Source: Pocillopora damicornis (taxonomy: Eukaryota). Taken from it: a stretch of DNA of 64,000 nucleotides. The translations under genes and the position numbers were made by a program. The notes under the pieces were generated by a model, which saw only the letters and a program-made list of their open reading frames with translations, ran no database searches and was not told where the DNA came from. Shown in pieces: positions 81 to 48,899 of this stretch (the first letter of the stretch is position 1; each line of letters starts with the position of its first letter). The stretch is from assembly GCF_003704095.1 (NCBI RefSeq), contig NW_020843882.1, positions 62,001-126,000 on the forward strand. Reading direction: 5' to 3'.

Positions 81-504
81 TATTATGTTGGTTCCATATA
101 ACTCCGTGAAGTGATAAATAAATGACTGTGAATATGTGAAAACTTATATGAATTTTATCTGTAGTTCACAGTCTGTTTAGACTAACGTGTTTTTAAACAA
201 ATTTTCGCCTCATTTAGTACAGCATTAACTGACACAGTATAAGATTCCGTCACTTTTGAATACAATCGCAGCCTAGATGATGAAGTCGCTTCATCTATCT
301 ACTTGGAAAACTCTAACTTAGCAACGCATAAATTTAAGGGCTCTATTCAAGTGCTAATTAGTGCTTTATAGAATAAACATTACAGATGCGCTGTGATACC
401 GTCCCACTTTATCTGCATTCAACAGAACGAGTGTTTTAACAAATTTTTTTCTCATTTGGTACAGCATTAACTAAATTCGGAATCGTCTTTTTTTTTGCTT
501 CAAG

Positions 505-2942
505 GTTCACTGCACGTCTCTGCCTATGAAGAAGACGAGGGATCCTTGCTAACTAGCCATCTTGGTATATCAACGTCTGAAGCTGGATGGAGAAGTTTGC
601 CTTTCTGTCCAACCAAGGGTAAGGTTAGGGGAAGGCATTTATTGTTTTCAGGCACAGATGGCGTTGGTTTCATGGCGGAAATGCAACAAGAAAGAGGCAT
701 TGAATTAGATGTCCCAGTGCCGGTTAAACTGAGTGCAAAGGATACTTATCCAGCTGTTTATCAGTTCATTCCAGCAGAAGACATTTCAAGCACACAACTT
801 GACATAACTGTCACTTCTGAGTCTGATGACGTACCAGCTTACTTAAAAGTATCACGTAACTGTAAGGATGTCAAAGACAACATTAACGTTGTGGACTATA
901 AAGGAGAGTCAATCCGTCTGTCGTTCGCCAAAAGGGGACGGATTACTTTGTCCAAGTTCTCCACTCCACCTTTGACCGCCTCCTCTTCCAGTTGGTTCAT
1001 TGGGATTGCAATTAAAAACGCCGCTGGCGAAACTTCCCCTAAAGCCACAAAGACAGTTGAATTGACTTTGACGAGATCATTTGATTACTCATACGCTCAT
1101 CCATTGTGGATTTCGCAACTTGTAATCAATGTTTTAGGTGGTGTTGCTATTTCTCTTTTGGCATGGTTTATTTTTAGAGTGAGAGATTGCGAGAAGTGCA
1201 AGAAGTGCATAAAGGGAAAAAGTAATAGTACTCCGGATAATTTTAGTTTAAGTATAACCCCCGGTGAATTTTTCTCAGCTATGCTGGCCGTTCTGTTTAT
1301 TCATTCGTTTAGTCGGGGTCCCAAAACGTACTCTTACATCACAATTATTGTCGGTTCGGTTTTAATGGTGGGTTCATTCCAGTTTGTCTTTGCAGACTGG
1401 TATTTAATGATTCAAGAGGGCGACAGAGATCACTGTTATTATAACGATTTCTGTTATCGAGTGCGCTATGCTGATATTCCCTATAATTTAATTGTTAGTA
1501 ATATTATTTACGTCTCGCAAGGCTTGATATTAGCTATAAATGTTCTTTGCATGGAGTCAGAGGTACTTGCTCGATGTACAAAACTTGCCAAGGAACAAGG
1601 AAAAAAGCTGAAACCAAATGAGGAAGAAGAGCACGCAAAACCACATTTTAAACGCGAAAAGAAAGAAATGAAAAAGAAACTACTAGAAGAGGAAAAGGGG
1701 GAGCAGAAATCAAGAGATACAAATGAAATAAAGGTGCAAGATGGAAGAGAGAATAGAGATAGAACGAGCGAGGATCAGGATCATTCTACAAAAATTGAAT
1801 CCCACGAAAGGTTACCTAATCACGTGTTAAGATGTCCCGATATTTCGCTTCATTTCAGAAAAATGCATGTTCCCAGAGATACCGAATCTCCTGACGAAAT
1901 GTTTCCTGCAGCAATTAAAAAGAAGTATAACTTTTCTTTGGGCTACGCTCAAGCCTGGGCCTTGTTGTTTGTAGGGGCATTTTCAGCACTTTATCATCTC
2001 TGTCCGAGTAGGTTGACTTTTCAGTTCGATACAGCTTTTATGTTCGTGAGTGCAGGTTTAAGTATTGTTTGGTGCTATAATGGCATTGAAATGCAGGAAT
2101 GCTCAGCAAGTGTAAGCGCTAAAAATCGTGTAGGAGCAGCAAATATGTTTCTTTACTTCGTAGTTCCTATGTTAATTTTCAATTATCTTGGAACAATGTA
2201 TCATTCAGAAGCAGGGCTCGCCAAAGTGTTCAGAATCCCGGTCTTTATACTTCTCGTTCTCTGGTTAGTAATCTTGCTATCGTGGGCTGGATATAAGTTG
2301 TTTCCTGAGATATGTAGTATAGCCTGCTGGAACTCTCTTGTTCAGAGGCGCTGTTCCAGTGAATGTTGTGAAAACTGTGAAAGGTTCTTCGAGAAGATCT
2401 GGAAAAACAAAGTGTTGATAATAGTTAGCTTTTTTGGTCTCTTCCTCTTTCCGATTTTGTTTGCGAGCCTCTGGATTGCTAAAGTATTAGAATTTACCGA
2501 CGCCTTTCTCTATCTTTGTTTAATAGAGAACGCTGTTGCAGCTTTCGGAACTTTCATTCTCGGCAGTTTTTTTGGCAGCCAGTCAGACTCCAGTGGATGT
2601 AACAAATGGTGTAAAATTTTATTCCGCTTTTTGCAAATTCCTTTTTTTGTGGCAGCCTTTGTCATTTTGGAAACAAATGAAACAATAGATAAGAGTAAGT
2701 CTCCTGAAAAATCGCGTGATTTAAACAGAGAATGTAACTTTATGGGTTTCTTTGACTGGCATGATATATGGCACATTTTTTCCTCGTTTGGTTTCCTTAT
2801 TTCGGCACTAGCGATGATCCATGATAGTTATGAACCTCCAAAAGAGATTCAAGATGGTGATAGGCCTAATTATGGCTCAACTCAAACTTATCATGGGTTG
2901 GAGTCATTGGTAATGTATGATAGCATTGAAGGCGCGCTCTGA
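505..2942 (+). CDS. SID-1 transmembrane family (SIDT1/2-like) protein, large terminal coding exon; 5' exons lie upstream of the window
   Basis: Splice acceptor tttttttttgcttcaag at 488-504, then an open frame to TGA at 2940-2942. SID-1 family motifs: GDRDHCYYNDFC, YNLIVSN, FSALYHLCPSRLTFQFDTAFM, SPEKSRDLNREC, FFDWHDIWHIFSS. Many hydrophobic helices. Confidence 0.9.
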
Positions 2943-6402: not shown

Positions 6403-7383
6403 TCAAACTGCATTTTGAGTGTCTAACTCACTGGATTTTGTTGTGTCTAGATCGTTCTGATCTCGGTCTCCTACTCCACCGCGACACACTGTGCCTGATT
6501 TCCACTGACATTTTAATAATCTTCTGTAAGCGTCACGAAACTCGGCGATACGAAAACAATATATCCAGGGATTCATTGAAGAGTTGCTCAAAGCCAGTGT
6601 CCTTGCCCAGTTATAAGACACGCCAAAATTTGCTTCTGCAAACACAGAGCGCAGGTAAAGGAGTGGAAACCAACAAATCGTGAAAATAACGACAACTATG
6701 GCTATTGTGACCGTCACGCGACGCTCAACCATGTGCTCAGAAGGTGTACCCCTAAGTGACTGTCCACGCAACCGCTTGAGAGTCGCCGAACCTTGTTTTC
6801 GGACTCTAAAAATGATTAAACTGTAGCACAAAATGATAATCAGATAACAGATGCCAACAGCTGCCACTGTGAAATAAGAAGTACCTTTCTTGCTCACTGT
6901 CAGACGTAAGATCCCATAGATTACCGGCAAAGTCCACGAGAAAACCAGGGCGATTTTGAATCGTTTTTTCGTGCGGTAGCTTCGAAAATCATGCGGCCGC
7001 AGAATCACCAAGCACCGATCAATGCTTATTAGGCAGAGATGAAGAACAGACGCAGAGCATGACATGTTGGCGATAAGACGGAACGCCTGGGAAACAAATT
7101 CGTGGCATTCGTCGCGTAACTGTAGGCCAAGAAAAACTGAAAACAGTGGTTGACTGAGTGCAGTTACCATCAAATCAGCCACAGCCATACTTGCTAACCA
7201 GTAATTGGAAATGATCTGTAAACTGGCATTCGTGAAAACTGTTCCGATCACCAATAAATTACCAATTGTGCCAATAATCATTGATAAGATGTTTACGGAC
7301 AACAATCCACTGATATGGCCTTCAGACAACTGGCAAGGCTGTGTTGTAGATGGGCTGGTTGAAACATTTACGGGGTCTTCCAT
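6403..7383 (-). CDS. Single-exon rhodopsin-class (class A) GPCR, 326 aa, ligand unknown
   Basis: Seven hydrophobic segments with GN (TM1), MAVAD (TM2), SIDRC (DRY position), W in TM4, CWFP (TM6), NPWIY (TM7) and helix-8 EFRDAY; N-terminal NVS sequon. Confidence 0.93.
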   Translation of the reverse strand: MEDPVNVSTSPSTTQPCQLSEGHISGLLSVNILSMIIGTIGNLLVIGTVFTNASLQIISNYWLASMAVADLMVTALSQPLFSVFLGLQLRDECHEFVSQAFRLIANMSCSASVLHLCLISIDRCLVILRPHDFRSYRTKKRFKIALVFSWTLPVIYGILRLTVSKKGTSYFTVAAVGICYLIIILCYSLIIFRVRKQGSATLKRLRGQSLRGTPSEHMVERRVTVTIAIVVVIFTICWFPLLYLRSVFAEANFGVSYNWARTLALSNSSMNPWIYCFRIAEFRDAYRRLLKCQWKSGTVCRGGVGDRDQNDLDTTKSSELDTQNAV

Positions 7384-12822: not shown

Positions 12823-15800
12823 TTAAACCAGTGTCTGAAGATCTTCGATCCAATTGTTGACTGGCCGTATAGACTTGCACTTGGTGTACACCTGAGCTCC
12901 CATTTTCTTTAAGATCGGAAGATCAAATGTAAGAAGCTCATCCGCGTCCTTCAGGCTGTTCATGCGCACAATCACCCAAACCTGTAGGATGTTTGATAAC
13001 ATGAATTTAGAGATGATCAAATACGTTGAGGTGACGAGAGAGGAATGAAAGAAAACTGGAGCATAAGAGGTGTTGGGGGGGAGGGGGGGGNNNNNNNNNN
13101 NNNNNNNNNNNNNNNNNNNNNNNNNTTCCGCTTTGGATGTCAACACTTCAGTCATAATCAATGCCAAGATGACGATCGAATTTTCTCCGTGAGTTGAGCC
13201 TGTTGTCCAGACTGGGAGGTATGCTCTGCTTGTTGTTCAAAAACAGAAACTTAATGCAACCGGAAAACTCTCCCGGGGAAAAAAAACCCAAACATGATTT
13301 TGTTTAGTCGCTTTAACTGTGCAAAAATGATCTAAATCAAAAGGAGTGATCTCGGCGGAGTTTCATACCCAGTTGAACTCTTTATCTGAGCACATAAAGA
13401 TTGAACTTTTAAACCGAAAAACTAGACAGAAAGGCGCTCAAACCTTACAAATAATCGACGTAATTTATTAGTATTTAAGGCAACACTGCACCCTTTCAGT
13501 GTCGTTCGCCCGGTAATTCAAATGAAAAATGCGTCCATTGGGTTGTTTCGTTGTCAGAGGATTTTTTTCCTGGTATGTTCTCAATCATTGATACAAGCAA
13601 ACTGATCAAAAAAAAAAGGGACAAAAAAAAAAAGGGGGAAAATCCAAGTTCAGTCAAGCGAACATGAACTTTTGACCCTCCGAGGGATGCTCTACGACTG
13701 AGGCTCTGCAAGACTCAGGGTAGCCGGTTTTATATAAAAAAAAAAAAAAGCTCTGCACACCGATTGGACATGAAATTGAATTTGAAGCTTTTGTGAAACT
13801 GACTGGAAATGAACTGTGTAGTATTCGACGCCTGATTCTTACCTGTCGTTCTGCCACCACTTTCCACAAGTCCACAATGTCTCCTAGTTTCTTTGCTTCT
13901 ATAGCAGATACTGCTTCGTCAGTCCAAGTGTTGCAAAGATCCAGTTGCGTTATGCCTGATTCAGAGACGAAGAGTCAGTCATAGGACTATACAATCGACG
14001 AACAAAGTCTGTCCTGTGACATGCAAAATGTTATGAAAGAAAATGGTAGTAGTCCTGTGGCTCATGAATTGAATTACACGCATGCGTAAGTGTCAGTGAA
14101 AAAAGAAACCGGTTCCTGGTTCAATAAATTTCTCTAGGAAAATTGATTTTTTTGTGGGAGAACATAACATTGATACATTAGGAGCGAGCTTAGGAACACT
14201 GGAAAACGTTCATTGGTCTTCGTTTGACGAGATAATTACAAACCTCCTATAGTGACCATGAAAAACGGCAATGCAATTAATTATGGTGACTGGAAAAACT
14301 TTCCGTATTTAAACAATTTTGCGCAACATTCTCGGTAAATTCGAGTATCTTTTTAACACTTTAGAGCATATTGTGGACAGCCCCGATTTTAGGTCCTTTC
14401 AGTCTGAATAAGAGGACAACAGGTGCAGCGCTGGGTAGATCACAGAGGTACAAGGACGGTTCTTCATAAGAGAAAAAATTTGAGGCAAACCAACCATTAT
14501 GTACATTCTTAAAGCACCTAAAGGGAATTGACAAAACACCATGAGCAGAGAAGCCACTGTACTGGTGTTATATGAATTTTCTTGGAACGTCTGCAAGTGC
14601 GTTTCGTGACGCATGACCGGTCAAATATTGGCTTCAAACAGACTGGTGAAAAGAGTAAAACGTTATCTCTTAATGTGATATAAACATACCCATATACTCG
14701 ACTCGAGACCACAAGAAGTAATACAATCCCTCTTTGGTCACGCTTTCCACATGAGTCGCGTCCAGGCTCCGATTACATCTCTCGGCAACAGTTCCAGCGA
14801 AATCCTCATAGGGTCTAAAAGGTTTCACCTCGGTTGTGATGCGAACGTCCGCTGATTGTTGCTTTAACAGAGTCGCAAAGCAAATGTCCAGTTGTCCTGG
14901 TGACTCTACACTGAGAACTGGAATGATACAAAATAAAAGAGGGAAATTAGATTCGCAAGGATAAAATTTTAATTTTAAGTAACGTCATGGGCTCCTGGCA
15001 ATGTATAAGATGAAAGATGAACCACCCTGAAAGCGAAGGGTGGTGGTGGGGAGGGGGGGGGGGGGNNNNNNNNNNNNNNNNNNNNNNNNNNNNNNNNNNN
15101 NNNNNNNNNNNNNTTTTTACGAAGATATCCTTTCATTTTACTGAGCTATTTAAGGACAAATGAACAGATTTAGGAAGTAAGTTTCCGAAAAAAATTGTGG
15201 TGCTGCGTCGGTGGGGTTTTCTTTTTTGGTTTTTATCAACCGAGTTGATGATTTAAATTCGTCAGACGAAGGGCTAACGCTCGAAAAGTCCGGTTACCAA
15301 TTTACACGATAAACGACTTAGTTGATAAAAACAAATTATCTCATTTAAGGACAAACTCTGACAGGTTGTGGTATATCGATCTCATCCAGCCACTCAAGGC
15401 AATTAGCAATCCCTGAAATTGCCCTCATTTCAGAATCTGACTGTTTATGAATAACAGAACAAATCGAAGCAGAGCCAAATACAATTAAAAAAATACTAGT
15501 TAGGAATCATTTGAAAAAGCTTGTTGGAGAATATAATGTTGCGTGACAGTGACGTTAGGTTGGTTGAGGAGTACAGTAATTTAATGCAACTCGATTTAGC
15601 GTCTGTTTTGTGTGACCTGAGAACTTAATTTCACAGCTTTCTTGCGTAATAACTTTAGTGTAACCTTTGAGCTGAAGCATTACTATTGCACGACACTCTT
15701 TTTTTGTCTACATAGATCTGTTACTGTTGATAAACCTTTTTGTGATATAATGAAGTCCGGCCGCCTAGAGGTATACATGACATGGTTTCCCTTCGCTACA

Positions 15801-16995
15801 AAGTGACAAAGACCACTTCAACGCACTCACCTCCTATCAGTTTATTTTCTCCGCATATCTGAAAATATAAGATTAAATGAAAAAGAAAGTCATCCTTATT
15901 TTGTTAAAGGGGCGTCTCCCGTTTGGGCGCGTGCAATCTTCTGGGACACTGACATTGTTGAGGAATCATGAAGAATAAGAGTGGTGCCCGAGGTTTTAAA
16001 GTTATTTTTAACACGACAGGCTTCATAAGCGAACAATCATATGAAGTGTATGCTTCGTTCTATGACACCACGCTTGGTTAATAACGCGCATATATCATGA
16101 CCGTTACCTAAAGCAGGACGGTGAAGGATTATGTGGCTACGTTGCGCTTAGCAGTCCTTTGTTTTCCAAAATCGAGTATCCTTTAACATACTTACTTTCT
16201 ATTTTGAACTTTTGACGGGGATGGAAAGGAAAAACCTGCAAACCTCAAAACTCGCGGCCAAACTGAACATGAACTTTCGAATCGCGGAGGTAATATTTTT
16301 GCGCGAAGCAGTTGCTTGCTGACGTCACAAGCGTGCACGATAAGGATATTCGAGGCACGTACGCGTGTACGGTATTGATTTTACTAGCTTGACCACCAGC
16401 TAGATCTCTCGCCAACTCGCGTTGCTCGAGACGCCTTCCTTACTTTGCACGGATGAACGGAACGTCGGCTTACCCTTCTTTGGATCGCAAATTCTTAACC
16501 TACGCAAACCGATCGAAAGGGGCGTTAAAATATACTTAATTTGACATTGAAAATATTTCAGTTGCCTTTTGTAAGTCTGGCATTGTAATAAGCTAATTTA
16601 CATGTCACCGCAATGTCAGCTATTGATTAATGCCGATTAAGGCGGTGGCTAAATGCTTGACAGTCTGAAATTTTTACTGAATTTCTACTGAAAGGTTCTT
16701 TAAAACTTGTTAAGAGTATCAGATGTTTGTTGAGAAATGTCAAGCGATTCTAAAAATTATTTTGGTTCTCAGCAATGTACAAATTTTCCGAGCTTCTGCA
16801 TGCTATAAAATTCCTCGGTTGTCGAAACTCTGCGCTTTTGTTAATTACCTTCCAGAACTGCTTGATTTCCACTCCCGTCGTTTTCGATGGATATGCAATA
16901 AACTCCTCGGCTATATTAAGCCATTTTCGAAACACATTATGCGAGTGTTCTCCCTGGAAGTCAATGGTGGTCTCAAAGTAGTAGAGCAGTCCCAT
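12823..16995 (-). CDS. Tandem-domain muconolactone delta-isomerase-like protein, paralog 3 (224 aa, 5 exons)
   Basis: Exons 16995-16849, 15858-15831, 14917-14690, 13955-13843, 12981-12823; all GT-AG; 675 nt in frame. Product MGLLYYFETT...QFWK ICGENKLIG VLSVESPGQLD...FRPYEDFA...GLYYFLWSRVEYMG ITQLDLCNTWTDEAVSAIEAKKLGDIVDLWKVVAERQ VWVIVRM...FDLPILKKMGAQVYTKCKSIR. Gene structure is secure; the CatC-family call is by motif recognition. Confidence 0.8.
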
Positions 16996-18226
16996 GATGC
17001 TGCCTGTAAGCTAACGACTTCTCTACGGGAAACCGAGGTGAAGGGTGTAAGCATTTGCAGTAACTTGACAAGCTGTATAATAGGCCTTGAGTAACCTGGC
17101 AATTTTGCGTGAGAGCGGCATGTCCAATCAACAATTTTCTTTTTGTTTTTCGGGAAGCAAGAGGGGGTGGGAGAGGACAAAATTTATAGCAATTTGAAAA
17201 TACTGAATTACAATGTGGAAAGAAAGTATCGCACGTGAATAATGATAAGGTCAACTCTCTCTCTCTCTCATTACGCAACCACTTTCCTTACCACCTTAAC
17301 AGTGAACGTTTTGTTTCACAATAAACACACGGAAACGTTTCAAAAACTCTCACCGCTCGATCCTCTTTACAGGCCGTTCTTTAGAAGCAAAGAAACATTT
17401 GCCTGGACCATTCAATTATATTTTGTCTTAATGTATTCCGACAACGATCACGGCTGAGCGCTATCCAGATTTGCTCTCTGAACTTGCAAGACGGGCCGTA
17501 CTTTTAACGTTAGGTCGCCACCCGGATCTGTGTTCTCATGGAGTTTGTTTTACTGAGTCTTTATCTGTCAAGTTTCTATTTAAAGGTTATTTCGGTTTCA
17601 GTACAGCTTGTAATCTTCCTTTTAGTGTCCATTGATGTATGCTTAATGCGAAGAGCCCTGATTGAATGCACAACAAGGCGGTTTTGAAAAATCTCACGCG
17701 AGCCTATCATGCCATGATTCTGGCATGTCCAACGGCCGAGCGCTGGCTAATCCCAAAGAGAGCCAAAAGCTGAAATGGGGCAAAAAAAAAAAACCTTAAA
17801 GTGCAGTGCACTGGAAACAACTTATGTAAATTATTACCTTGAATCGAATGGATTTTCATTTCAATTTTAAATGAATAAGAAAATTGATCAGAAATTGCAT
17901 GGTTTGAAGTTTCGTCACCAGAAGTGATCCCATGCTTAACTCGCCAAATGTGAATCAAACCATAAGTCACGGAGTAGTATTTTATACATTCGATTGCAAA
18001 AGCGTTGACATCTGAAAAGCACGACCGGCGAACGATGAGACCAAGTCAATAGTGACCCCAAATACACACTTGTGAAAACTTAAGAAAAAAATTGAATCAT
18101 TCAGTTTAATTTATTCTTTGAATCAAATAAATCATATTTGTTAGAACAGCGGAGTTTTCAAATTAATCAGAGGAAGGAAAGATCATTGTGCCGGAATAAG
18201 CCAAATATGAATGGGGTAAAAAAAAT

Positions 18227-18337
18227 TATCTGGGCAACTGCCCACCTACCCCTGCCCTAACCCAACAATAGTCTATTGATAATAAGTTAGGGTTAATGTT
18301 GGGTTAGGGGAGGGGTAGGTGGGCAGTTGCCCAGATA
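18227..18337. repeat. Foldback element/MITE with 41-bp inverted arms
   Basis: TATCTGGGCAACTGCCCACCTACCCCTGCCCTAACCCAACA (18227-18267) pairs with 18297-18337 with one mismatch; a related copy lies at 34483-34660. Confidence 0.85.
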
Positions 18338-18388
18338 CTGATATTGATCCAAAAAATCTATGTGATGAAACACATATTTTCAGATTAG

Positions 18389-20243
18389 TTATCTGTTTTC
18401 CGCAGTACTTAGCCGCGAGGAAGACATTCGAAATTGTTCTTTCTCTATTTCCCTGACTTCTCTCATCCAGTCGTCAGCCTGGCGAATAGACTTGCATGTG
18501 ATCTGGACTTTGTCACCCATCTTTTTCATGACAGGCAATTCAAATGATATCTTGTCCAAATCTCCTGGTTTTTCAACACACACAATGGCAAAAACCTATA
18601 AATAGCAGATCAGATCTTTTAGCCACCAATCTTGCCAAGTCATTTTTAATCAATACGCATATTCGCATAAAGGTTAATAAAAAATAGATAAATAAACAAA
18701 TAAATGAGCAAAAGTCTTAGGAAAGTTTAGAAGACTTTAGCAATGCTTTAGCGGACTGCAGCTGTATTATGTAGTAAGCAAAACCTGCAATCGAACTGTT
18801 CGGTTGAGTTCATGCATTTAAGGTTGCATCATCTGAAACAACTCTGAAACCCATGCAAAGCCTAACTACAATTATAAGCTATCCTCCTTTTTGGAAAAAA
18901 AAAAGAGGAAAAGGCAAAATTTAGAGCCAATTATGGAAGTCAAATTGATATTACCTTTCGTTGTGCTACCACTTTCCACAAGTCCCTTACAATTCCAGAT
19001 TTCTTCGCTCCTAAAGCAGCTTTCCCTTCTTCAAACCAGACTTTGAAGAGGTCTTCTTGAGTCATGCCTGGAGAAGGAACAAAAACTAAATTTCATAATC
19101 AAATCAAGGCTACAAAATTATCCTTGACACAAGCAAGAGGACCTCTGTCGCTGCGTGGAACCTAGTTTAAAATTAAAGGAAGACCTAACGTCGTTAACCG
19201 CCTGACTGAATGACTGACTTACTGACTGTCCGGTAGCCTTTGTAGTTGGCGATTTCAGTTAGGTGCGCTAAAGCGATGAACAGCGAAGATGGGAAAGGCT
19301 CGTCAAAGGCAGACTTTCAGTACAGAAAGTTTCATCATTACCTTCATATTCCACTGTAAAAGTGAGAAAGTAATGTAGACCATTTTTTGGTACACAATGC
19401 ACAAGACTGATATTGGTATCTTCCTCCAGCCAGTCTCCAACATTGGCGGCAAAATCTTCATAAGGTCTCAATGGGGTGAACACAGTAGAGATTCCGTTTA
19501 CTAAGTGTTCATAAGAAGACGCAACCCAAGAATCCAGCTCTCCTGGCGAATCCACACTGATGACTGCAGAAAAATGACGAGACGCATTGTTCAGAAGAGC
19601 GATCGATCAGCAAGTGAAAAAATTAGATGAAATTCCAAAGAAAGAAACCTATAGGGATACCCATTAGTAAATAAGCCGTGCTTTTCGTGACAGCAGTTGT
19701 TTCTTATGTTCTTCTTTGAAATTTTGCGCGAGAAATTGGCGAGCAACCGGCTAAAATTGATCCCCCCTACGCATGCCGTAGGTTTGACCGGTGTGCATGT
19801 TCATCACTCGCGCCGCAGCGTTAATAAAAAACTTCACGTAGGCAATCGAGTACTCTGGCATCGATTCGCAGTCTTATATTCTCACCTCCTATCAGTTTGT
19901 GTTCGCCAGGAATCTGTAACCACAAAGAAAAACAAGTAAATGAGACGTTACAGGCACAGTGTGCCGCACGTTGCGTGATGCTCGTCACATAAGGCTTAAT
20001 TTTATATGCTGCATATCTTTGATTTAATATCTTAGCCTATATGACTATGGGCTCAGCAGAGACGATATGCAAATAAACAAACACGAAAGAGAGATCAGGT
20101 TAAAAGTATAAACTGACCTTCCAAATCTCTCTGATGGATAGTGAGCGCGAGCCCTTGAGAGCATTATAGAGAGAAAGACACGAATGAACATATCCCTGTT
20201 CATTGAGCTTCGCAGTAGATTCAAAAAAATAGAGCAACCCCAT
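18389..20243 (-). CDS. Tandem-domain muconolactone delta-isomerase-like protein, paralog 2 (231 aa, 5 exons)
   Basis: Exons 20243-20118, 19913-19886, 19563-19342, 19067-18955, 18595-18389; all GT-AG; 696 nt in frame. Product MGLLYFFEST...EIWK IPGEHKLIG VISVDSPGELD...TPLRPYEDFA...LHYFLTFTVEYEG MTQEDLFKVWFEEGKAALGAKKSGIVRDLWKVVAQRK VFAIVCVEKPGDLDKISFELPVMKKMGDKVQITCKSIR. Confidence 0.82.
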
Positions 20244-21174
20244 TACTTCTGTGGTGGAATTTCGGTTACAAAGAATATCACTCCGCACAGGTTCGTATGC
20301 AGGAATTGGAGCAAAAAGTAGTGATCCCAAGTTCGACACTAACACTTAGATAAGCCCGCACCAAAATTAGTATTTTGAATGCTGAATTTTTATCATCACG
20401 TCCAGTTTAACCTGTTAAATATACGTAGTTTTGCTTGCTAATTACTATGTGGGCTAATTATAATTTCTTTATGCCATCGTTTATTGTTAATTACGTATGA
20501 GTCGGTAGGCTTGCTATTCTATTCGGCCAAAAAAGAATAGAGCAATATTTGTGTTCCTTTCTGAAAATATTTTTGCTTTTTTTGTTTCCGTTTCTTCGTG
20601 ATTCGCAGCTCAGATCTTGCCAAAATCTTAACATATCTTTTTCCACGTGTGTTTTTTTCCAGTTTCGTAATCAAAAGTGATCAAAAAGGAAAACATTACT
20701 CTATATTAGCTTTCATGAAAAAGCTAAGCCAATATACTCGCTCCGGTTGGTTGAAAATCCATTATCTATTGTAAAGAGAAACCCATTGCTTTCTTATGAC
20801 GTCAATAGGGAGCCTTTTCTGTCGTTTTACCAGGATATTAGACCACAGAAAAGCTTCTTAATTACGAGCCGAAGGCAAGGTATTTTACAAACTTTTCTCG
20901 TGACCACTGACATGCGAAGTAGTTTATTTTCCCGATAAACCGATAGAAAGTGCGGTGTAACGCTTGAATATGTTTTGATTGCTACAAGCTCCTTTCTTCA
21001 ATTCTTTTTGTTACTCTCCATGACACGTAACCGAAAAAATATAGGAACCTAGGTAGTAGCGAATAAGTTGAAAAATTACATTTAGATGTATAACAATTTT
21101 ACAAGTCTAATTATGAAGGTCCTATAGCAAAACGTCATCAGATATTAAACCACGTGTTAAACATAGAGTTAAAT

Positions 21175-21412
21175 TAATAAAATGGGATTTAGCAGTGGAC
21201 ATTCCACGAAGTAGCTCTTCTCGTCCGCTGTTACCAGGTCAAATTGTAATTTAGAATGTTGGTTTTTGTAGAGAGAAGAAAAACGAGTGACCGGAAAAAA
21301 ACCCTCAGAGCAAGGACTTAGAACTAACAACAAACACAACCACATGTAATGCCGGGTCCATGAATCGAACTCGGGCCACTATGGTGAGAGGCAAGCGCCA
21401 TCCCTGCTCCCC
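21175..21412 (-). mobile_element. tRNA-derived SINE with conserved central domain
   Basis: Minus strand starts GGGAGCAGGGATGGCGC, has a B-box-like GAGTTCGATTC, then ATGTGGTTGTGTTTGTTGTT...GAGGGTTTTTTTCCGGTCACTCG; a related fragment lies at ~56885-56950. Confidence 0.6.
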
Positions 21413-22043
21413 TGCTGGAGTTGATTTACTGGTTCCGGAATGCTATGCCGAATTTTATCCTGCACAATTAGCCTTTGAATCCAGACTGTTCTGGCAACAG
21501 TCAGCGTGGTTCTACCACTGATTCAGTAAGTGACCTTCTCACCACATTAGCCTTTTTCGAACTTTATATTCACCTCAATAGTATTCCTCTCCATTTCCTT
21601 TGCTGTTTGGCGGCAAAACCCGTTTGGGGCTAACACGGGGAGTGCCCTTTCGAGAATGGGCGTGGTACTATTGGTAAATGCTGCTGGCACTACAGGCGAG
21701 GTGTAGCCATCATTCATATGCCTTCAGTACCCTTTCACGGTAATCACTGCCGTTTTTCTTTCATGCGAGTGCCTACCATGAAAACCGCCGTCGCGCAGGA
21801 AGCACATAAAGAGGAAGAAAGTACGTTGAATAAACACAGACTTTGCAAGATTTGCTTTTCTTATTTTACTGTATTTATCATAATACCCCTCATATGACGA
21901 GCCAAAACTTCCTTACATATAACCTTCCCTGAATAACGCAAATCTGTTCTGGCTTCTTTTCTACAATATTGCTTAGATTTTAGTTCACCGACGAGGATCA
22001 TTGCCTTAATTAATTTTGATCCGCAGGTGAAATGAAATGAAAT

Positions 22044-25000
22044 CTATTTACAATGGTCAGGTAGACTTATGGCGTTATATGTTTCACGCCTGACTTCTTT
22101 GATCCAGTCGTCAGCTTGGCGAAGAGACTTGCATGTGATATGGACTTTGTCTCCCATTTTCTTCATGATAGGCAGGTCAAATGATATCGCGTCCAGATCC
22201 CCTGGTTTGGAAACACACACAATGGCAAACACCTGCAAAATAACAGCCTCGTCATTTATTGCATCCCACAATGATAAATTTACTGCGGTGATTATGCGCT
22301 TATAAGCACATGCTGATACGCCAGCGGGAACCAGGCTTAAACGATCGCAAAGGAGCAGTTTATCGCCAATCATTTCACGTTTTACAGAAACAAAAATTTC
22401 CGAATTTTTTGTTTTGTAGAACATCAGTGTTAGGCAGAACAAGTTCGATCTGCCGTTGAAGGCGTTTTATGTGTTTGGATTGCAAGTTAACGGCCGGTGG
22501 GAAGTCTTAATCCGCCCTCTTACACTCCTTCCGCTCGACAAAATTAAAGCGTTGCAACAAAGGAACTCATAACCCTTCTTACTCATGCATCCGTGCGGTC
22601 ATAGAGTGCACTTCTCCAGTTTTTCATAATTCACTCCCAAGCTACCTGTCAGACGAACTGGATGGTTACAGAAGCGCGCCATGTGAATTAACTGCCCGCA
22701 TGTTACCGATTGAGAGGTATTTTAATACAAAATGAAGGCTCGCTTAGAGACATTTTTGGATCGGACTGACAGGCTCAAACGTTTTGAGACGTCAAAAACA
22801 ATCTTGATAAAAAACTATACAGATTTTCACTTGGGCAAATGATGCAGTTTTAATCTGATAGTCGTAGATATCACTTCCCTATCTGCAAAAACGAACAGAC
22901 TGGACTTGAGAACAGTTTCCGTTACAGCAGTTGTATATGGACGATTTTATTTCGTAATTTCATTGGGTAATTTTTTTAATCCTTGTGAAGTTTTATTTAA
23001 TTCAGCTTAGAGCAGTAATTCTGAAACTTCTATAAACTATCCATCTATCAATCTATCTATCTCGGACAGCTAGACAGATTAACACACCTTTCGTTGTGCC
23101 ACCACTTTCCACAAGTCCAACACAGTTCCAGATTTCTTAGCATCCAGAGCAGCCTTTGCTTCTTCGCGCCAGATTCTGAAGAGGTCTTCCTGAGTCATAC
23201 CTGAAGAAGAAACAAAATTTATGAAATTATAGTCCCAGATCAAACTAAAGCTAAACAACAGAGTCCAGTCTCTCTTTAGGAAACAAAAAGCTTTCTAGCA
23301 CATCGAGGAACTGGCCAGGTAAATATTGATTTAAAGAAGAAGTGATTGTTTAACCACAAAACGAACTGACAGTGGCCATAATGAATTACAGTCGAAACTA
23401 GTTTAATGAGCTCCTTGCTTTTAAAGAAAAAAGAGAAGAAAACTGATTTGCCATATATTTGCCTGGACTCATATGAGTCGCTAGCGTGCCAACCGTACAA
23501 ATAGTAGATTCAATGGGAAGGTACGGGGTGCTTCCGGACCTCTTCCCTTCTCCCCTCCCTTCACCATCAGGTCGGCGAAAGACCAAACGACATAGCAGGT
23601 GCCAGTTTATCAAGCTAACAATCAGAGTAACAGGACCAACCTAGCCGACATGTTCTTACCGTATACGAAGAATAGCGTAATCAAAATCTATACCTTGCAT
23701 GCTTGAGTAGCGAAGGTGTTGCTTTGGGAGTGAAATAAAGTTAAAATCGCAAGTAAAAGAGATTTCCCTTTTAAAAAGAGGATTGAGAGAGAAAAAAATC
23801 GATTTGCTCAGATGTTTCGTGACGTCAAAAGACTTCTTTTATATAAATATAATTCTGCCAACACCTTTACCTTCGTATTCCACAGTAAATGTGAGAAAAT
23901 AATGCAGGCCAGTTCTTGGTACACATTCTACTAGACTAATATTGCTTTCTTCCCCAAGCCTGTCCCCAACAGTAGCAGCGAAATCTTCATATGCCCTAAG
24001 AGGGGTAAAAACGGTAGTAACGTGGATGCTGAAACCTTGCAACCATACGGCGGACTTAAAAAATGCATCCAGCTCTCCTGGGGCCTCCACACTGACGACT
24101 GGAAAGGACAAAAGAATTATTCGGAAAATAAATCAGCATGTGGAAGCGTGAAGCAAGTTCCAAAGAGGAAAATAAACTAAATAAACCTAAAAGAATCTCT
24201 TCATAGTGAGCTATAAAAATTCGCAGATATGATCTACAGTTGTACTTCTTTTGTCATCCTGAGTGTTCAGAAAAAAAGGAAGATCAAATTGTTCTTCAAA
24301 TATCTTAAACATAAAAAAAGGAAAAAGTTGTAAATTGGAAAAAGTTTCAAATTCTTAAAATCCACATACGTTATTGCTTACCCCCAATCAGTCTTGGTTC
24401 TCCAGGAATCTGTAATCAAAGATTACGTCATATATAAGACTTAATTTATCCCTTGATGTCGTTATCCGCTGGTATTCTATTGAATCCGTAAATAATTCTT
24501 TGGATCGGAAAATATAACTTTAACACCAATATCCACCTTTCTTCATTGATTTAGAATGGTTCTTACAAACCTCCATTGGGAATTTCCTCAAACTTTTTTA
24601 AAAAAAGTTAAGTAAAGAAGGAAAATAACTTACAAAAATGTCTCAACTAGTGTCAACAGTCTTGTGTCACGCATTCCTTATTACCCATCCCGCCTTACTT
24701 TCACTACAACTTGCAAGCTTATCTCTCGTTTATCGGATTTTATAAAATTTGTTGAAAGTGCAACTCTACTAGTTGTTACACTGGCATACATTCCGCGCTT
24801 GACTCGGAAAAGATCAGTTATTTTCGAGTAATACGCTGATCATGAATCATATAATTATTAATTCTTCATTGTTTTCGCTCGCCACGAATGCATCCCCAAT
24901 GAAGCGGCCAACATGTAATGAAGATAATATCTCACAGTCATTCATTTAGGGAGCTTCTTTCACTGGGTCATAAAAACAAAAAATATGGAAAAAACAACCT

Positions 25001-25179
25001 GAAGAGAATTCAAGGGCTCAAAATTAAATTATCAAGTATCAGACCTTCCAGAAATGTTTGATGGCTCCTTTCTCACTCAATCTTGTTTGAAGGAAAGCAT
25101 TACAGAAAGAGCTACATAATGAATCATAATCCAATCCAGGAAATTTCGCTGTGGAATCGAAGAAGTAAAGCAACGCCAT
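22044..25179 (-). CDS. Tandem-domain muconolactone delta-isomerase-like protein, paralog 1 (230 aa, 5 exons)
   Basis: Exons 25179-25045, 24409-24382, 24098-23871, 23200-23088, 22232-22044; all GT-AG; 693 nt in frame. Product MALLYFFDST...HFWK IPGEPRLIG VVSVEAPGELD...TPLRAYEDFA...LHYFLTFTVEYEG MTQEDLFRIWREEAKAALDAKKSGTVLDLWKVVAQRK VFAIVCVSKPGDLDAISFDLPIMKKMGDKVHITCKSLR. Confidence 0.82.
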
Positions 25180-47370: not shown

Positions 47371-48606
47371 TTAGTTGCTTGGGAAAATTTCTTCAATTGC
47401 TAAAGCTATTTGCTTCACACAGTGTTCAAGGGTAGGACTGTCAAGAAATGCAAATGAAAGCCTCATACAATTTTTGTATTGTCCTTTACACGAACATCGT
47501 GAGCCCTTGTTAAAATCAACAGCATACTTATTGAAACAGATGTCATATAGTTTATCGCAGTCAATCTCAGGGGGGAGAACAACCCAAACAAAATAACCTC
47601 CCTGGGGTTTTGTGTATTTAATTGCACGTGGAAAGTACTTATCCATAGCACTACATAGTGTATTCAACTGGGACTTATAAAGCTCTCGTGCATATGCTAC
47701 ATGCTCCTTTACCAAACCCATTTGTATTGCCATGGTAACAACACAAGAGGTGTAATGGTTGAAGCAACCCCCACTTGTAACATACCCAGAAGTCCTCAAA
47801 ATCTTTCTTACATGTTCAGGGACCTCCATCCAGCCTAGACGCAAGCCAGGTCCTAACAGTTTGGAAAAAGTTCCATTTGAGATCACATTTCCTTTGTAAT
47901 CAGGATCAGCCTTGTTATCAAATGAAAAAAGCCTAGGGGGAACTTTAAAAGTAGGTTTTTCTCCATCATAAGAGAGCAAGTTGTATACATCATCACAAAA
48001 AGCAAGCACATTGTACTTCCGAAGCAGTTTGATCAACTGCTTACACCTTGTTACAGAAAGTACAGAGCCGGTTGGATTGTTAAAAGTTGGAATGCAATAG
48101 AGCAAACCAGAGAATGGATTTCTCTCAGTTATAACTGGCAATGTCTGCAAATGTTCTGCCATTAATTTCTCCAACTCATCAACAATCAAACCATCTTGAT
48201 CTGTCGGAACCCCCACCAAATTCATCCCAAAGTCATCTGATAAAGCTTTAAGGGCAAGGAAATAAGTTGGTTCTTCGACGAAAGCTACAGTCTTAGGCTG
48301 AAAGAGGAGGCTTCCTATGCAGGCCAGGCCTTGTGAAGCACCAGCAGTGAACCAGATGTCATCACAGTTGACAGTGTCACCATACTCCTCAGTGAGAAAT
48401 TTGGTGAGCTCACTCTTAGCTGCTAAGCTTCCACTGTGTGGTCCATACTGAAACAGCTGAGGATAATTTTCTGGAGTATGAAGAGCTAGAGTTGCTTTAT
48501 GAATAAGCTCACCACATTTCATGCGCAGATGTTCACTTGGTGCCCCGACACGTAGGCTATGCACTTTCCTGCCATCCTTCGTAAGGTAGTCAAACAATGT
48601 TGTCAT
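47371..48606 (-). CDS. PLP-dependent class I/II aminotransferase (AADAT/Aro8/YER152C-like subgroup), intronless CDS, 411 aa
   Basis: Motifs FQYGP, TAGASQGL, VEEPTYF, IPTFNNPTG, DDVY, GTFSKLLGPGLRLGW (PLP lysine), GGYFVW and MRLSFA; ATG at 48606. Confidence 0.92.
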   Translation of the reverse strand: MTTLFDYLTKDGRKVHSLRVGAPSEHLRMKCGELIHKATLALHTPENYPQLFQYGPHSGSLAAKSELTKFLTEEYGDTVNCDDIWFTAGASQGLACIGSLLFQPKTVAFVEEPTYFLALKALSDDFGMNLVGVPTDQDGLIVDELEKLMAEHLQTLPVITERNPFSGLLYCIPTFNNPTGSVLSVTRCKQLIKLLRKYNVLAFCDDVYNLLSYDGEKPTFKVPPRLFSFDNKADPDYKGNVISNGTFSKLLGPGLRLGWMEVPEHVRKILRTSGYVTSGGCFNHYTSCVVTMAIQMGLVKEHVAYARELYKSQLNTLCSAMDKYFPRAIKYTKPQGGYFVWVVLPPEIDCDKLYDICFNKYAVDFNKGSRCSCKGQYKNCMRLSFAFLDSPTLEHCVKQIALAIEEIFPSN

Positions 48607-48899
48607 CTTGAAAATTGGGTGTTTGCTAGCTGAGCTGTCAAGTAACAATAAAATGTAACAATGTTTAATGAAATCAATAATATATGACCTTTATAGGAAA
48701 TTAAATTAAAGTAATGATCCTCGCTGGTGAAATTGCGCAAAAGAATCTCCAGTTGACAAAACAAAATCAGACTTTGATGGGATTCCTTCCAGTTGAAGCC
48801 TGATTTTTTCACCCTTCTTTTCCACAATTGCTTGAATGTAGCTTTAACTAGACATGCTTTCTCCAATTAATTATTACATCTCAAGTCTGGAGTGACCTG

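What the first reader, a model, noticed from the sequence alone, without database searches (positions are those of the whole stretch)
12823..25179. Tandem cluster of three intron-containing muconolactone isomerase (CatC)-like genes in an animal genome
Seen: three co-oriented genes, fragmented in the ORF track, share one five-exon layout (invariant 28-nt exon 2, 113-nt exon 4, phases 0/1/1/0) and splice into intact 230, 231 and 224 aa proteins. Their C-terminal half (YFLTFTVEY..MTQ..LF..W.EE..AA..AKK.G...DLWKVVA.RKV.AI..V..P.DLD....LP.M......V..T...LR) follows the MIase/CatC (Pfam PF02426) pattern F.V.M.V...E......Q..G.W..LWR..G......F.V.S..ELH.IL..LPL......V..L. Established: CatC acts in the catechol branch of the beta-ketoadipate pathway of bacteria, which animals are not known to run. 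Inference: an old horizontally acquired (or otherwise patchily retained) enzyme that gained introns and expanded locally, perhaps for aromatic or haloaromatic turnover, lactone chemistry or host-symbiont metabolite handling. Spliceosomal introns and flanking animal genes argue against contamination.
Basis: partly seen in the sequence, partly recalled or inferred. Interest (0 to 1): 0.9.

Follow-up and report, generated by a model that had tools for sequence, protein, structure and literature searches.

The report
Ancient animal tandem MIase-like gene cluster
Three neighbouring, spliced and expressed coral genes each encode a protein made of two fused domains of a fold best known from a bacterial enzyme. 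They belong to an old animal gene family, shared with amphioxus down to a 28-base micro-exon. They are not the bacterial catechol-pathway enzyme itself, and their chemistry is unknown.

Summary
Three minus-strand five-exon genes encode 224, 231 and 230 aa, with a 28-nt exon 2, a 113-nt exon 4 and intron phases 0/1/1/0. All borders are AG/GT, and both assembly gaps lie in introns.

The genome is Pocillopora damicornis. Genes A and B equal RefSeq LOC113686894 and LOC113686892. RNA contigs from three studies carry the predicted junctions.

All three products pass Pfam MIase (35.5, 50.5 and 65.6 bits against a cut-off of 26.7). An AlphaFold model shows two ferredoxin-like domains.

They are not CatC. 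They score 28-51 bits against the CatC equivalog cut-off of 130.6, and the genome shows no intradiol dioxygenase.

The family also occurs in other corals, a jellyfish and amphioxus. Amphioxus shares all four intron positions and the micro-exon, so the gene predates the cnidarian-bilaterian split.

The closest prokaryotic relatives found are single-domain cyanobacterial proteins (49% identity). The best structural match is snail ovorubin (Z 17.7-18.7).

The cluster has five genes; two lie upstream of the window. Other first-reader notes of this scan (s1-780513, s1-786044) describe those upstream copies and the pseudo-dimer reading.

Function remains inferred. Most likely it is an isomerase-type enzyme with one active C-terminal domain.

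The parts
25045..25179 (-). Gene C exon 1 (ATG at 25179; first strand and helix of the degenerate N-terminal domain)
   Evidence: Junction 24409|25045 is seen in RNA contigs of X1, X9 and X2.
24382..24409 (-). Gene C exon 2, 28-nt micro-exon
   Evidence: Junctions on both sides appear in RNA contigs.
23871..24098 (-). Gene C exon 3 (second half of the N-domain, linker, first strand of the C-domain)
23088..23200 (-). Gene C exon 4, 113 nt (C-domain helix 1 with the Glu aligned to ClcF/MIase E27, and the LWK strand)
   Evidence: (18 bits on PF02426 on its own)
22044..22232 (-). Gene C exon 5 with stop codon (rest of the C-domain and the tail)
20118..20243 (-). Gene B (RefSeq LOC113686892) exon 1
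   Evidence: P0108 reads the same as the exon translations. Junction in RNA.
19886..19913 (-). Gene B exon 2, 28 nt
19342..19563 (-). Gene B exon 3
18955..19067 (-). Gene B exon 4, 113 nt (holds E139, the residue aligned to E27)
18389..18595 (-). Gene B exon 5 with stop codon
16849..16995 (-). Gene A (RefSeq LOC113686894) exon 1
   Evidence: 100% identical to P0158
15831..15858 (-). Gene A exon 2, 28 nt
14690..14917 (-). Gene A exon 3
13843..13955 (-). Gene A exon 4, 113 nt
12823..12981 (-). Gene A exon 5 with stop codon
15066..15113 (.). Assembly gap inside intron 2 of gene A (not filled, not looked up)
13091..13125 (.). Assembly gap inside intron 4 of gene A (not filled, not looked up)

Best explanation
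These are three of five clustered Pocillopora damicornis genes. Each encodes a protein of about 225 aa with no evident signal peptide.

Each protein is two fused MIase-family (PF02426) ferredoxin-like domains that pack into one intramolecular alpha+beta barrel. This mimics, in a single chain, a pairing of two single-domain subunits (a pseudo-dimer).

The family is an old animal one. The fused, intron-bearing gene already existed before cnidarians and bilaterians split, and it has been kept in only some lineages. Its ultimate source was probably a bacterial single-domain MIase-family gene, of the kind now seen in cyanobacteria. That gene was duplicated and fused, and it gained introns.

Inferred mechanism: the C-terminal domain keeps the glutamate that aligns with the catalytic E27 of ClcF/MIase. 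It acts as a proton-shuttling isomerase or tautomerase on an unknown unsaturated lactone or enol-type acid. In the three window genes the N-terminal domain has lost that residue and serves as the structural partner.

It is not the CatC step of a beta-ketoadipate pathway.
For: Shown:
- The splice models are exact and transcribed.
- Pfam MIase is passed above its cut-off by the products of A and B and by a C-like product.
- The AF2 model has pLDDT 89.3 and pTM 0.84, with two beta-alpha-beta-beta-alpha-beta domains; strand 1 starts at residue 3.
- The C-domain superposes on ClcF with Z 10.8-11.8 and rmsd 2.4-2.8 A over 89-92 residues.
- The profile aligns to 1mli and ClcF with E27 opposite the second E of the W-x-E-E-A motif. 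That Glu is present in the C-domains of A, B and C and in 13 of 16 family members, and absent from the N-domains of A, B and C. The title of PDB entry 3zo7, 'ClcF E27A with substrate', supports the residue's role.
- Family members occur in Stylophora, Desmophyllum, Oculina, Acropora, Montipora, the jellyfish Sanderia and Branchiostoma.
- The amphioxus gene has the same four intron positions and phases and a 28-nt exon 2.
- In the domain tree all eukaryotic C-domains form one clade (95/86), so the fusion predates their divergence.
- A cyanobacterial single-domain protein is 49% identical to the coral C-domain (E 4e-31). It is 50% and 42% identical to the C- and N-domains of a marine eukaryotic member.
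- 15 of 301 cyanobacterial genomes hold such a gene scoring 131-147 bits. The best score in 301 Actinomycetota genomes was 78 bits.
- It is not CatC: TIGR03221 gives 28-51 bits against 130.6, and the genome has no PF00775 match and no PcaD equivalog.
Against: - No activity, substrate or oligomeric state is known for any member.
- The best whole-protein structural match is a carotenoid-binding storage protein, not an enzyme.
- The aligned Glu is D or N in 3 of 16 members.
- The bacterial donor cannot be named. Only two phyla and the plasmid collection were sampled.
- The tree places a cyanobacterial protein as sister to the C-domains only (90/79, unstarred). This could reflect faster N-domain evolution or a more complex history.
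- Absence of the family from other animals was not tested genome by genome.
Confidence: 0.55

Rival explanations
1. The proteins are non-catalytic ligand-binding or storage proteins. They would be relatives of apple-snail ovorubin (PV1) and hold a carotenoid or other hydrophobic small molecule in the two-domain barrel.
For: Ovorubin 9uaj is by far the best structural match. The coral model gives Z 17.6-17.7, rmsd 2.4-2.5 A, with 179-180 of 184 residues aligned. The amphioxus model gives Z 18.7 and 17% identity. The next hits score 11-12.6. Amphioxus also has a Kazal plus MIase-like fusion, which looks like an extracellular protein.
Against: No sequence-level link to 9uaj was found. The coral proteins start directly with strand 1, whereas ovorubin-type subunits carry an 18-21 aa signal peptide (PMC5696525). 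The E27-equivalent Glu and 49% identity to cyanobacterial proteins point to a conserved chemical role. In one cyanobacteria-like contig the homologue is preceded by an overlapping Cupin_2 gene and followed by a GFO/IDH/MocA oxidoreductase gene.
Confidence: 0.25
2. The proteins are true muconolactone isomerases (CatC). They would work in a catechol or chlorocatechol (beta-ketoadipate-type) degradation route in the coral or its holobiont.
For: They match Pfam MIase, have the MIase/ClcF fold and conserve the Glu.
Against: TIGR03221 equivalog scores are 28-51 bits against a cut-off of 130.6. No intradiol dioxygenase domain was found, and only generic hydrolase-level hits to PcaD. The nearest bacterial relatives are 'MIase family proteins' outside cat operons.
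Confidence: 0.05
3. The genes come from recent or lineage-specific horizontal transfer into corals (or separately into corals and amphioxus), or from bacterial or symbiont contamination of the assembly.
For: The family is patchy among animals, and the nearest non-eukaryotic relatives are bacterial.
Against: Four GT-AG introns per gene are confirmed by spliced RNA. Animal-type genes flank the cluster on the same contig. Counterparts occur in both major coral clades, a scyphozoan and amphioxus. Intron positions and phases, and the 28-nt exon, are identical in amphioxus. The paralogues are only 43-66% identical.
Confidence: 0.03

Closest known systems
Single-domain 'muconolactone Delta-isomerase family proteins' of cyanobacteria (e.g. 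the Cylindrospermopsis plasmid gene at L016:6004-6306, and L024:1489-1809:-)
   Same: They belong to the same Pfam family (73.7 and 55.4 bits). One is 49-50% identical to the eukaryotic C-domain and 42% to an N-domain. They share the motifs, including the Glu aligned to E27. They also fall below the CatC equivalog cut-off (31.5-47.5 bits).
   Different: They are about 101-107 aa with one domain and no introns. They occur in about 5% of the cyanobacterial genomes sampled. Their function is also unknown. Their neighbours vary: AAA_21 with DUF4435, Cupin_2, and a GFO/IDH/MocA oxidoreductase.
CatC muconolactone isomerase (1mli) and ClcF 5-chloromuconolactone dehalogenase (3znj, 3zo7, 4fpi)
   Same: The ferredoxin-like fold matches (Z 10.8-11.8 on the C-domain). 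The profile aligns over about 80 residues with E27 conserved.
   Different: The PDB profile hits are only about 18-21 bits, and TIGR03221 scores are far below the cut-off. CatC and ClcF are single-domain chains of 94-96 aa; MIase-family proteins are reported to be homodecamers (PMC4835899). These proteins are fused two-domain chains, there is no cat pathway context, and their oligomeric state is unknown.
Ovorubin / PV1 egg carotenoproteins of Pomacea snails (PDB 9uaj)
   Same: The two-domain architecture superposes almost residue for residue: Z 17.6-18.7, rmsd 2.4-2.5 A, 179-180 of 184 residues. It is an animal protein of similar length.
   Different: Identity is only 13-17% and there is no HMM-level hit. 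Ovorubin subunits are secreted, glycosylated, carotenoid-binding members of a large oligomer, and were reported to have no similarity to any known sequence (PMC5696525). Homology is therefore a structural inference.
Other fused ferredoxin-like alpha+beta barrels (chlorite dismutase, HemQ, DyP, and tandem ABM-type 'putative monooxygenases' 3mcs and 3f44)
   Same: They share the tandem duplication and fusion of two ferredoxin-like domains into one barrel (PMC4835899).
   Different: The fits are much weaker (Z 9-12.6, rmsd 3.9-4.5 A) and there is no sequence relation. Several of them (chlorite dismutase, HemQ, DyP) bind heme; nothing here was tested for heme binding.

Membership tests
Pfam MIase domain family (PF02426) | Whole-protein score at or above the gathering cut-off of 26.7 bits | tested here: met
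   P0108 (gene B) 50.5 bits; P0158 (gene A) 35.5; P0110 (gene C-like transcript product, 91-100% identical on exons 1, 3 and 4; the exon 5 tail differs) 65.6. Exon 4 alone gives 18 and 13.7 bits.
Pfam MIase domain family (PF02426) | Ferredoxin-like fold that superposes on solved MIase/ClcF structures | tested here: met
   AF2 model with pLDDT 89.3. ClcF chains give Z 10.8-11.8, rmsd 2.4-2.8 A, with 89-92 residues aligned on model residues 114-209.
Pfam MIase domain family (PF02426) | Glutamate at the position of E27, the residue mutated in the ClcF substrate complex 3zo7 | tested here: met
   It is met in the C-domains of A, B and C and in 13 of 16 aligned family members. It is not met in the N-domains of A, B and C. 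The catalytic role of E27 rests on the PDB entry title and my recollection of Roth et al. 2013, which I could not read here.
Pfam MIase domain family (PF02426) | Homodecameric (pentamer of dimers) assembly | not tested
   No oligomer prediction was run. The fused chain would replace one dimer.
CatC, muconolactone Delta-isomerase proper (NCBIfam equivalog TIGR03221, EC 5.3.3.4) | Score at or above the equivalog cut-off of 130.6 bits | tested here: not met
   P0108 27.8, P0112 41.4, P0001 36.7, P0028 50.6 bits; P0056 has no hit.
CatC, muconolactone Delta-isomerase proper (NCBIfam equivalog TIGR03221, EC 5.3.3.4) | Pathway partners present in the genome (catechol 1,2-dioxygenase, enol-lactonase) | tested here: not met
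   PF00775 gave no candidate in the 234-Mb genome. For TIGR02427 the best hit was 43.6 bits against a cut-off of 255.85. Caveat: the search works exon by exon, on a draft assembly.
CatC, muconolactone Delta-isomerase proper (NCBIfam equivalog TIGR03221, EC 5.3.3.4) | Isomerisation of (+)-muconolactone to 3-oxoadipate enol-lactone | not testable with these tools
   This needs an enzyme assay.
Ovorubin / PV1 carotenoprotein family | Two-domain subunit fold | tested here: met
   9uaj gives Z 17.6-18.7 and rmsd 2.4-2.5 A over 179-180 of 184 residues, for both the coral and the amphioxus models.
Ovorubin / PV1 carotenoprotein family | Detectable sequence relationship | tested here: not met
   Family profiles A2 and A5 searched against PDB sequences at E up to 10 gave no 9uaj chain. 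Structure-based identity is 13-17%.
Ovorubin / PV1 carotenoprotein family | Signal peptide and secretion; carotenoid binding | tested here: inconclusive
   The coral proteins begin with strand 1 at residue 3, so no signal peptide is apparent, but no predictor was run. Ligand binding is not testable here.
Bacterium-to-animal horizontal gene transfer | Nearest relatives outside the recipient clade are bacterial, and distribution among animals is patchy | tested here: met
   Cyanobacterial proteins are 49-50% identical and score 131-147 bits on the family profile. Named animal hits are only corals, a jellyfish and amphioxus.
Bacterium-to-animal horizontal gene transfer | The transfer is recent or lineage-specific | tested here: not met
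   Amphioxus and coral share four intron positions and phases and a 28-nt exon. All eukaryotic C-domains form one clade.

The most novel reading that the evidence does not exclude
The 'orphan' apple-snail egg carotenoprotein ovorubin (PV1) may be a secreted, fast-evolving descendant of this ancient animal tandem-MIase family. If so, the intracellular coral and amphioxus members would also work by holding a hydrophobic ligand such as a carotenoid in the two-domain barrel, not by catalysis. A bacterial enzyme fold would then have been turned into an animal pigment or ligand carrier before bilaterians arose.
Probability: 0.2. Interest if true: 0.8.

Novelty: new variant of a known kind. Interest (0 to 1): 0.62.

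Why it matters
MIase-family proteins are treated as bacterial catabolic enzymes. This work shows a fused, intron-bearing version that animals have carried since before the cnidarian-bilaterian split. Its 28-nt micro-exon is conserved between a coral and amphioxus.

The finding offers a concrete case of a probably bacterial-derived fold domesticated very early in animals. It points to cyanobacterial-type proteins as the closest living prokaryotic relatives found so far.

It also gives a testable origin for the ovorubin/PV1 family, which the literature describes as lacking any known relatives.

Databases list these genes only as 'uncharacterized' or 'MIase domain-containing'. I found no paper on them, so the chemistry they perform in corals is open and can be tested directly with recombinant protein.

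Tried and rejected
- **Exon-by-exon Pfam and PDB searches.** These gave only weak hits: exon 4 scored 18 and 13.7 bits, and the other exons gave none. Frame continuity was checked in a script from exon lengths and split codons. Database proteins identical to the exon translations (P0108, P0158) or near-identical (P0110) were used for full-length tests.
- **Bacterial genome scans.** A related-loci scan with alignment A2 failed because no column block was conserved enough. With P0112 it found no bacterial relative. With the cyanobacterial protein it found one locus.
- **Word-based protein searches.** These reached only corals and unnamed marine contigs.
- **Spurious hits.** Long multi-stretch hits of the representative search (P0024, P0070, P0072, P0074, P0085) are repeat or low-complexity proteins and were rejected.
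- **Literature.** Searches for animal MIase, for the locus names and for an ovorubin structure paper found nothing relevant. The ClcF mechanism paper is not in the library.
- **PHROGs.** No hit.
- **Work lost.** The script machine was lost. A larger tree with the 25 new bacterial loci, dN/dS among the paralogues and pocket inspection of the model could not be done.
- **Gap letters.** P0004, returned and printed, reads through an assembly gap from another copy of this genome. I did not use those letters.
Full report
**Observation**

On the minus strand I located start codons, splice donors, splice acceptors and stops for three co-oriented genes.
- Gene C spans 25179-22044.
- Gene B spans 20243-18389.
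- Gene A spans 16995-12823.

Each gene has five coding exons. Exon 2 is 28 nt and exon 4 is 113 nt in all three. Intron phases are 0/1/1/0, and every intron is GT...AG. The coding lengths are 693, 696 and 675 nt, giving 230, 231 and 224 aa.

I found the 28-nt exon by asking for AG-28 nt-GT candidates shared by all three first introns.

**Assembly gaps**

The gaps at 15066-15113 and 13091-13125 fall inside introns 2 and 4 of gene A, and no exon contains an N. RefSeq protein P0158 (LOC113686894, 224 aa) is 100% identical to the translations of the four gene A exons aligned and carries the exon 2 residues between them. The exons on both sides of both gaps are therefore joined in frame in the annotated product. 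One database fragment (P0004) reads across a gap and was ignored.

**Handling of the spliced models**

Exons were searched by reference. For full-length tests I used database proteins that match the exon translations.
- P0108 (LOC113686892, 231 aa, on a contig of the same length as the window's contig C517) stands for gene B.
- P0158 stands for gene A.
- P0110, a 230-aa transcript-derived product, stands for gene C. It is 91-100% identical on exons 1, 3 and 4 and differs in the exon 5 tail, so it is an allele or a sister-species form.

**Organism and context**

The genome is Pocillopora damicornis. Other ORFs in the window hit SID-1, a rhodopsin-type GPCR and an aminotransferase. Other first-reader notes report HAP2.

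**Transcription**

Contigs of oligo-dT or polyA RNA libraries from three studies were laid on 19300-25200 (5,901 letters). They carry joints at 22232|23088, 23200|23871, 24098|24382 and 24409|25045 (gene C), and at 19563|19886 and 19913|20118 (gene B). All have CT..AC ends on the plus strand, which is GT..AG on the minus strand. Spliced forms cannot come from contaminating DNA.

**What the proteins are**

- *Pfam.* Pfam MIase (PF02426, cut-off 26.7 bits) is passed by the B product (50.5), the A product (35.5) and the C-like product (65.6). Two stretches match in the B and C-like products and one in the A product.
- *Model.* An AlphaFold2 model of P0108, built on a 16-sequence family alignment, is confident (pLDDT 89.3, pTM 0.84). 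It shows two beta-alpha-beta-beta-alpha-beta domains joined by a linker, with strand 1 starting at residue 3. No signal peptide is apparent.
- *Fold match.* The C-domain (residues 114-209) superposes on ClcF chains with Z 10.8-11.8 and rmsd 2.4-2.8 A over 89-92 residues.
- *Sequence match to solved structures.* The family profile aligns to P. putida MIase (1mli, E 0.002-0.004) and to ClcF over about 80 residues.
- *The conserved glutamate.* In that alignment E27 lies opposite the second Glu of the family motif W-x-E-E-A. E27 is the residue replaced in PDB entry 3zo7, 'ClcF E27A with substrate'. The C-domains of A, B and C keep it (E139 in B), as do 13 of 16 aligned members. The N-domains of A, B and C have lost it, whereas many relatives keep it in both halves.

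So each protein is a fused pseudo-dimer with one conserved and one degenerate half. This agrees with first-reader note s1-786044.

**Cluster size**

A six-frame search of the whole assembly with the exon 3 profile finds five genes. All lie on contig C517 within about 47 kb. Two are 18-23 kb upstream of the window, and one of them has a well-preserved N-terminal MIase domain encoded in a single exon. This agrees with note s1-780513.

**Not CatC**

- The NCBIfam equivalog model for muconolactone Delta-isomerase (TIGR03221, cut-off 130.6 bits) gives only 27.8-50.6 bits for four family members tested, and none for amphioxus.
- The coral genome gives no candidate for the intradiol dioxygenase domain PF00775. 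Against the PcaD equivalog it gives only generic hydrolase-level matches (43.6 bits against 255.85).
- The closest bacterial homologues are annotated 'MIase family protein' and sit next to NTF2-like, ankyrin, SDR, EthD, CoA-enzyme, Cupin_2 or GFO/IDH/MocA genes, or next to an AAA_21/DUF4435 pair. None is in a cat operon.

**Distribution and age**

A profile search of 1.84 billion representative proteins with the exon 3 alignment gave 85 hits. Full-length two-domain members of 215-230 aa carry names from these organisms:
- the corals Stylophora, Desmophyllum, Oculina, Acropora and Montipora, and other Pocillopora species;
- the scyphozoan Sanderia malayensis;
- Branchiostoma belcheri and B. floridae.

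Further members come from unnamed eukaryote-like sources. These include polyA-type marine transcripts and an intronless copy on a gene-poor 377-kb contig. A member whose cluster holds Montipora proteins lies next to Med17 on a run contig.

The paralogues are old. B against C is 64-66% identical and A against B is 43%. Stylophora has a B-type protein (78% identical to B) and Desmophyllum has an A-type protein.

The decisive result is gene structure. In B. belcheri LOC109467940 (locus L048):
- exon 1 ends after ...FK followed by gtaag (phase 0);
- exon 2 is a 28-nt exon flanked by cag and gtgag;
- exon 3 begins and ends in phase 1 (…atg g|gtaagg);
- exon 4 is 110 nt and ends …agg aag|gtaat (phase 0);
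- exon 5 follows tag.

All four intron positions and phases, and the micro-exon, match the coral genes. Independent transfers into corals and amphioxus, and any recent transfer, are thereby excluded. The intron-bearing fused gene predates the cnidarian-bilaterian ancestor.

**Relation to bacteria**

A tblastn search of the plasmid collection found a Cylindrospermopsis gene at 37.5% identity that matches both halves of the query.

Through a Dolichospermum locus I obtained a genome handle and scanned 301 cyanobacterial genomes with the family profile. Fifteen hold a single-domain gene scoring 131-147 bits on the C-domain part of the profile. The best of 301 Actinomycetota genomes scores 78 bits.

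One such cyanobacterial protein (L024:1489-1809:-) is 49% identical to the coral C-domain (E 4e-31). It is 50% and 42% identical to the C- and N-domains of a marine eukaryotic member. It passes Pfam MIase (73.7 bits) but not the CatC equivalog (47.5 bits).

I built a 37-row domain tree: 16 eukaryotic N-domains, 16 C-domains and 5 plasmid-borne bacterial proteins. CatC proper was left out for want of a referable sequence, and the root is at the midpoint only.
- All eukaryotic C-domains form one clade (95/86).
- The Cylindrospermopsis protein is their sister (90/79, unstarred).
- The N-domains fall outside, in several groups.
- The long amphioxus N-domain branch is placed unreliably.

This shows that the duplication and fusion predates the divergence of all sampled eukaryotic members. 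It does not settle the donor or whether the N-domains simply evolve faster. A larger tree was prevented by the loss of the script machine.

**Ovorubin**

The best whole-protein structural match is ovorubin of Pomacea canaliculata (PDB 9uaj, released 2025-12-31).
- The coral model gives Z 17.6-17.7, rmsd 2.4-2.5 A, 179-180 of 184 residues aligned and 13-14% identity. The next hits score about 11.
- A second, independent model of the amphioxus protein (pLDDT 85.4) gives Z 18.7 and 17% identity. The next hit scores 12.6.
- No sequence-level link is detectable.

[quoted passage not shown] I found no paper on 9uaj.

I read this as probable distant homology, which is a structural inference. It is also the main reason to keep a ligand-binding function as a serious rival.

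**Mechanism**

This part is inferred.
- Most likely (about 0.5): an enzyme with no evident signal peptide, so probably intracellular. The C-domain Glu shuttles a proton to move a double bond or tautomerise an unsaturated lactone or enol acid, with the N-domain as scaffold.
- Second (about 0.25): a ligand carrier in the manner of ovorubin.
- A true CatC role (about 0.05) and recent HGT or contamination (about 0.03) are poorly supported.

**Novelty**

Databases already flag the Pfam domain; UniRef names one member 'Muconolactone isomerase domain-containing protein'. I found no publication on the family.

The new points are:
- the fused animal architecture;
- its age, shown by shared introns;
- the closeness of the cyanobacterial-type relatives;
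- the structural tie to ovorubin.

I class it as a new variant of a known kind, with interest 0.62.

Noticed in passing
G000:C517:38900-44700 (17-23 kb before the window; loci L001, L002, L004): Two more paralogues sit on the same strand. One (about 41649-39020) has a well-preserved N-terminal MIase domain encoded in a single first exon. The other (about 44650-43417) lacks an identified first exon.
   Followed up: partly
P0075 (Branchiostoma belcheri LOC109487477, 780 aa): This amphioxus protein combines Kazal-type protease-inhibitor domains with a Pfam MIase hit (31.6 bits). Its sequence also appears to hold several further MIase-like segments. It looks like an extracellular fusion. That is of interest because ovorubin is described as a proteinase inhibitor (PMC4063725).
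   Followed up: partly
window 19913-22025: Low-depth RNA contigs (run X1, depth 3.5) join 22025 to 21847 and 21574 to exon 2 of gene B at 19913. This suggests a rare read-through or alternative first exon that links the 3' region of gene C to gene B.
   Followed up: no
window 24382-25200: One polyA metatranscriptome contig (X4) runs unspliced through intron 1 of gene C with 22 differences and several small indels. It may be an intron-retaining transcript or DNA from a related Pocillopora.
   Followed up: no
L024, L026, L027, L028 (cyanobacterial genomes): The single-domain MIase-like gene lies directly downstream of a gene of about 300 aa. That gene is DUF4435 in the three loci scanned (L024, L026, L028), and in L024 an AAA_21 ATPase gene precedes it. 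Elsewhere (L049, L050) a Cupin_2 gene overlaps the start of the MIase-like gene, and a GFO/IDH/MocA oxidoreductase gene follows in L049. Some of this synteny may only reflect close kinship of the genomes.
   Followed up: partly
L018 and L019 (Nostoc and Streptomyces plasmids): A more distant MIase-family gene is preceded by an ankyrin-repeat gene in both phyla. NTF2-like, SDR, EthD or VOC genes lie nearby, which looks like a small secondary-metabolism-type cluster.
   Followed up: no
window 47371-48648 (-): A 425-aa uninterrupted ORF matches class I/II aminotransferases (105.9 bits). It is intronless in an otherwise intron-rich region.
   Followed up: no
window 495-2942 (+) and 6403-7383 (-): Long single-ORF SID-1-like (815 aa) and rhodopsin-type GPCR (326 aa) genes flank the cluster.
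   Followed up: partly
L048 1408-2017 and 3884-4496 (amphioxus): Exons 1 and 2 of the amphioxus gene occur twice, about 2.5 kb apart, with N runs between them. This is either a local duplication or an assembly artefact, and it may explain the two annotated isoforms.
   Followed up: no
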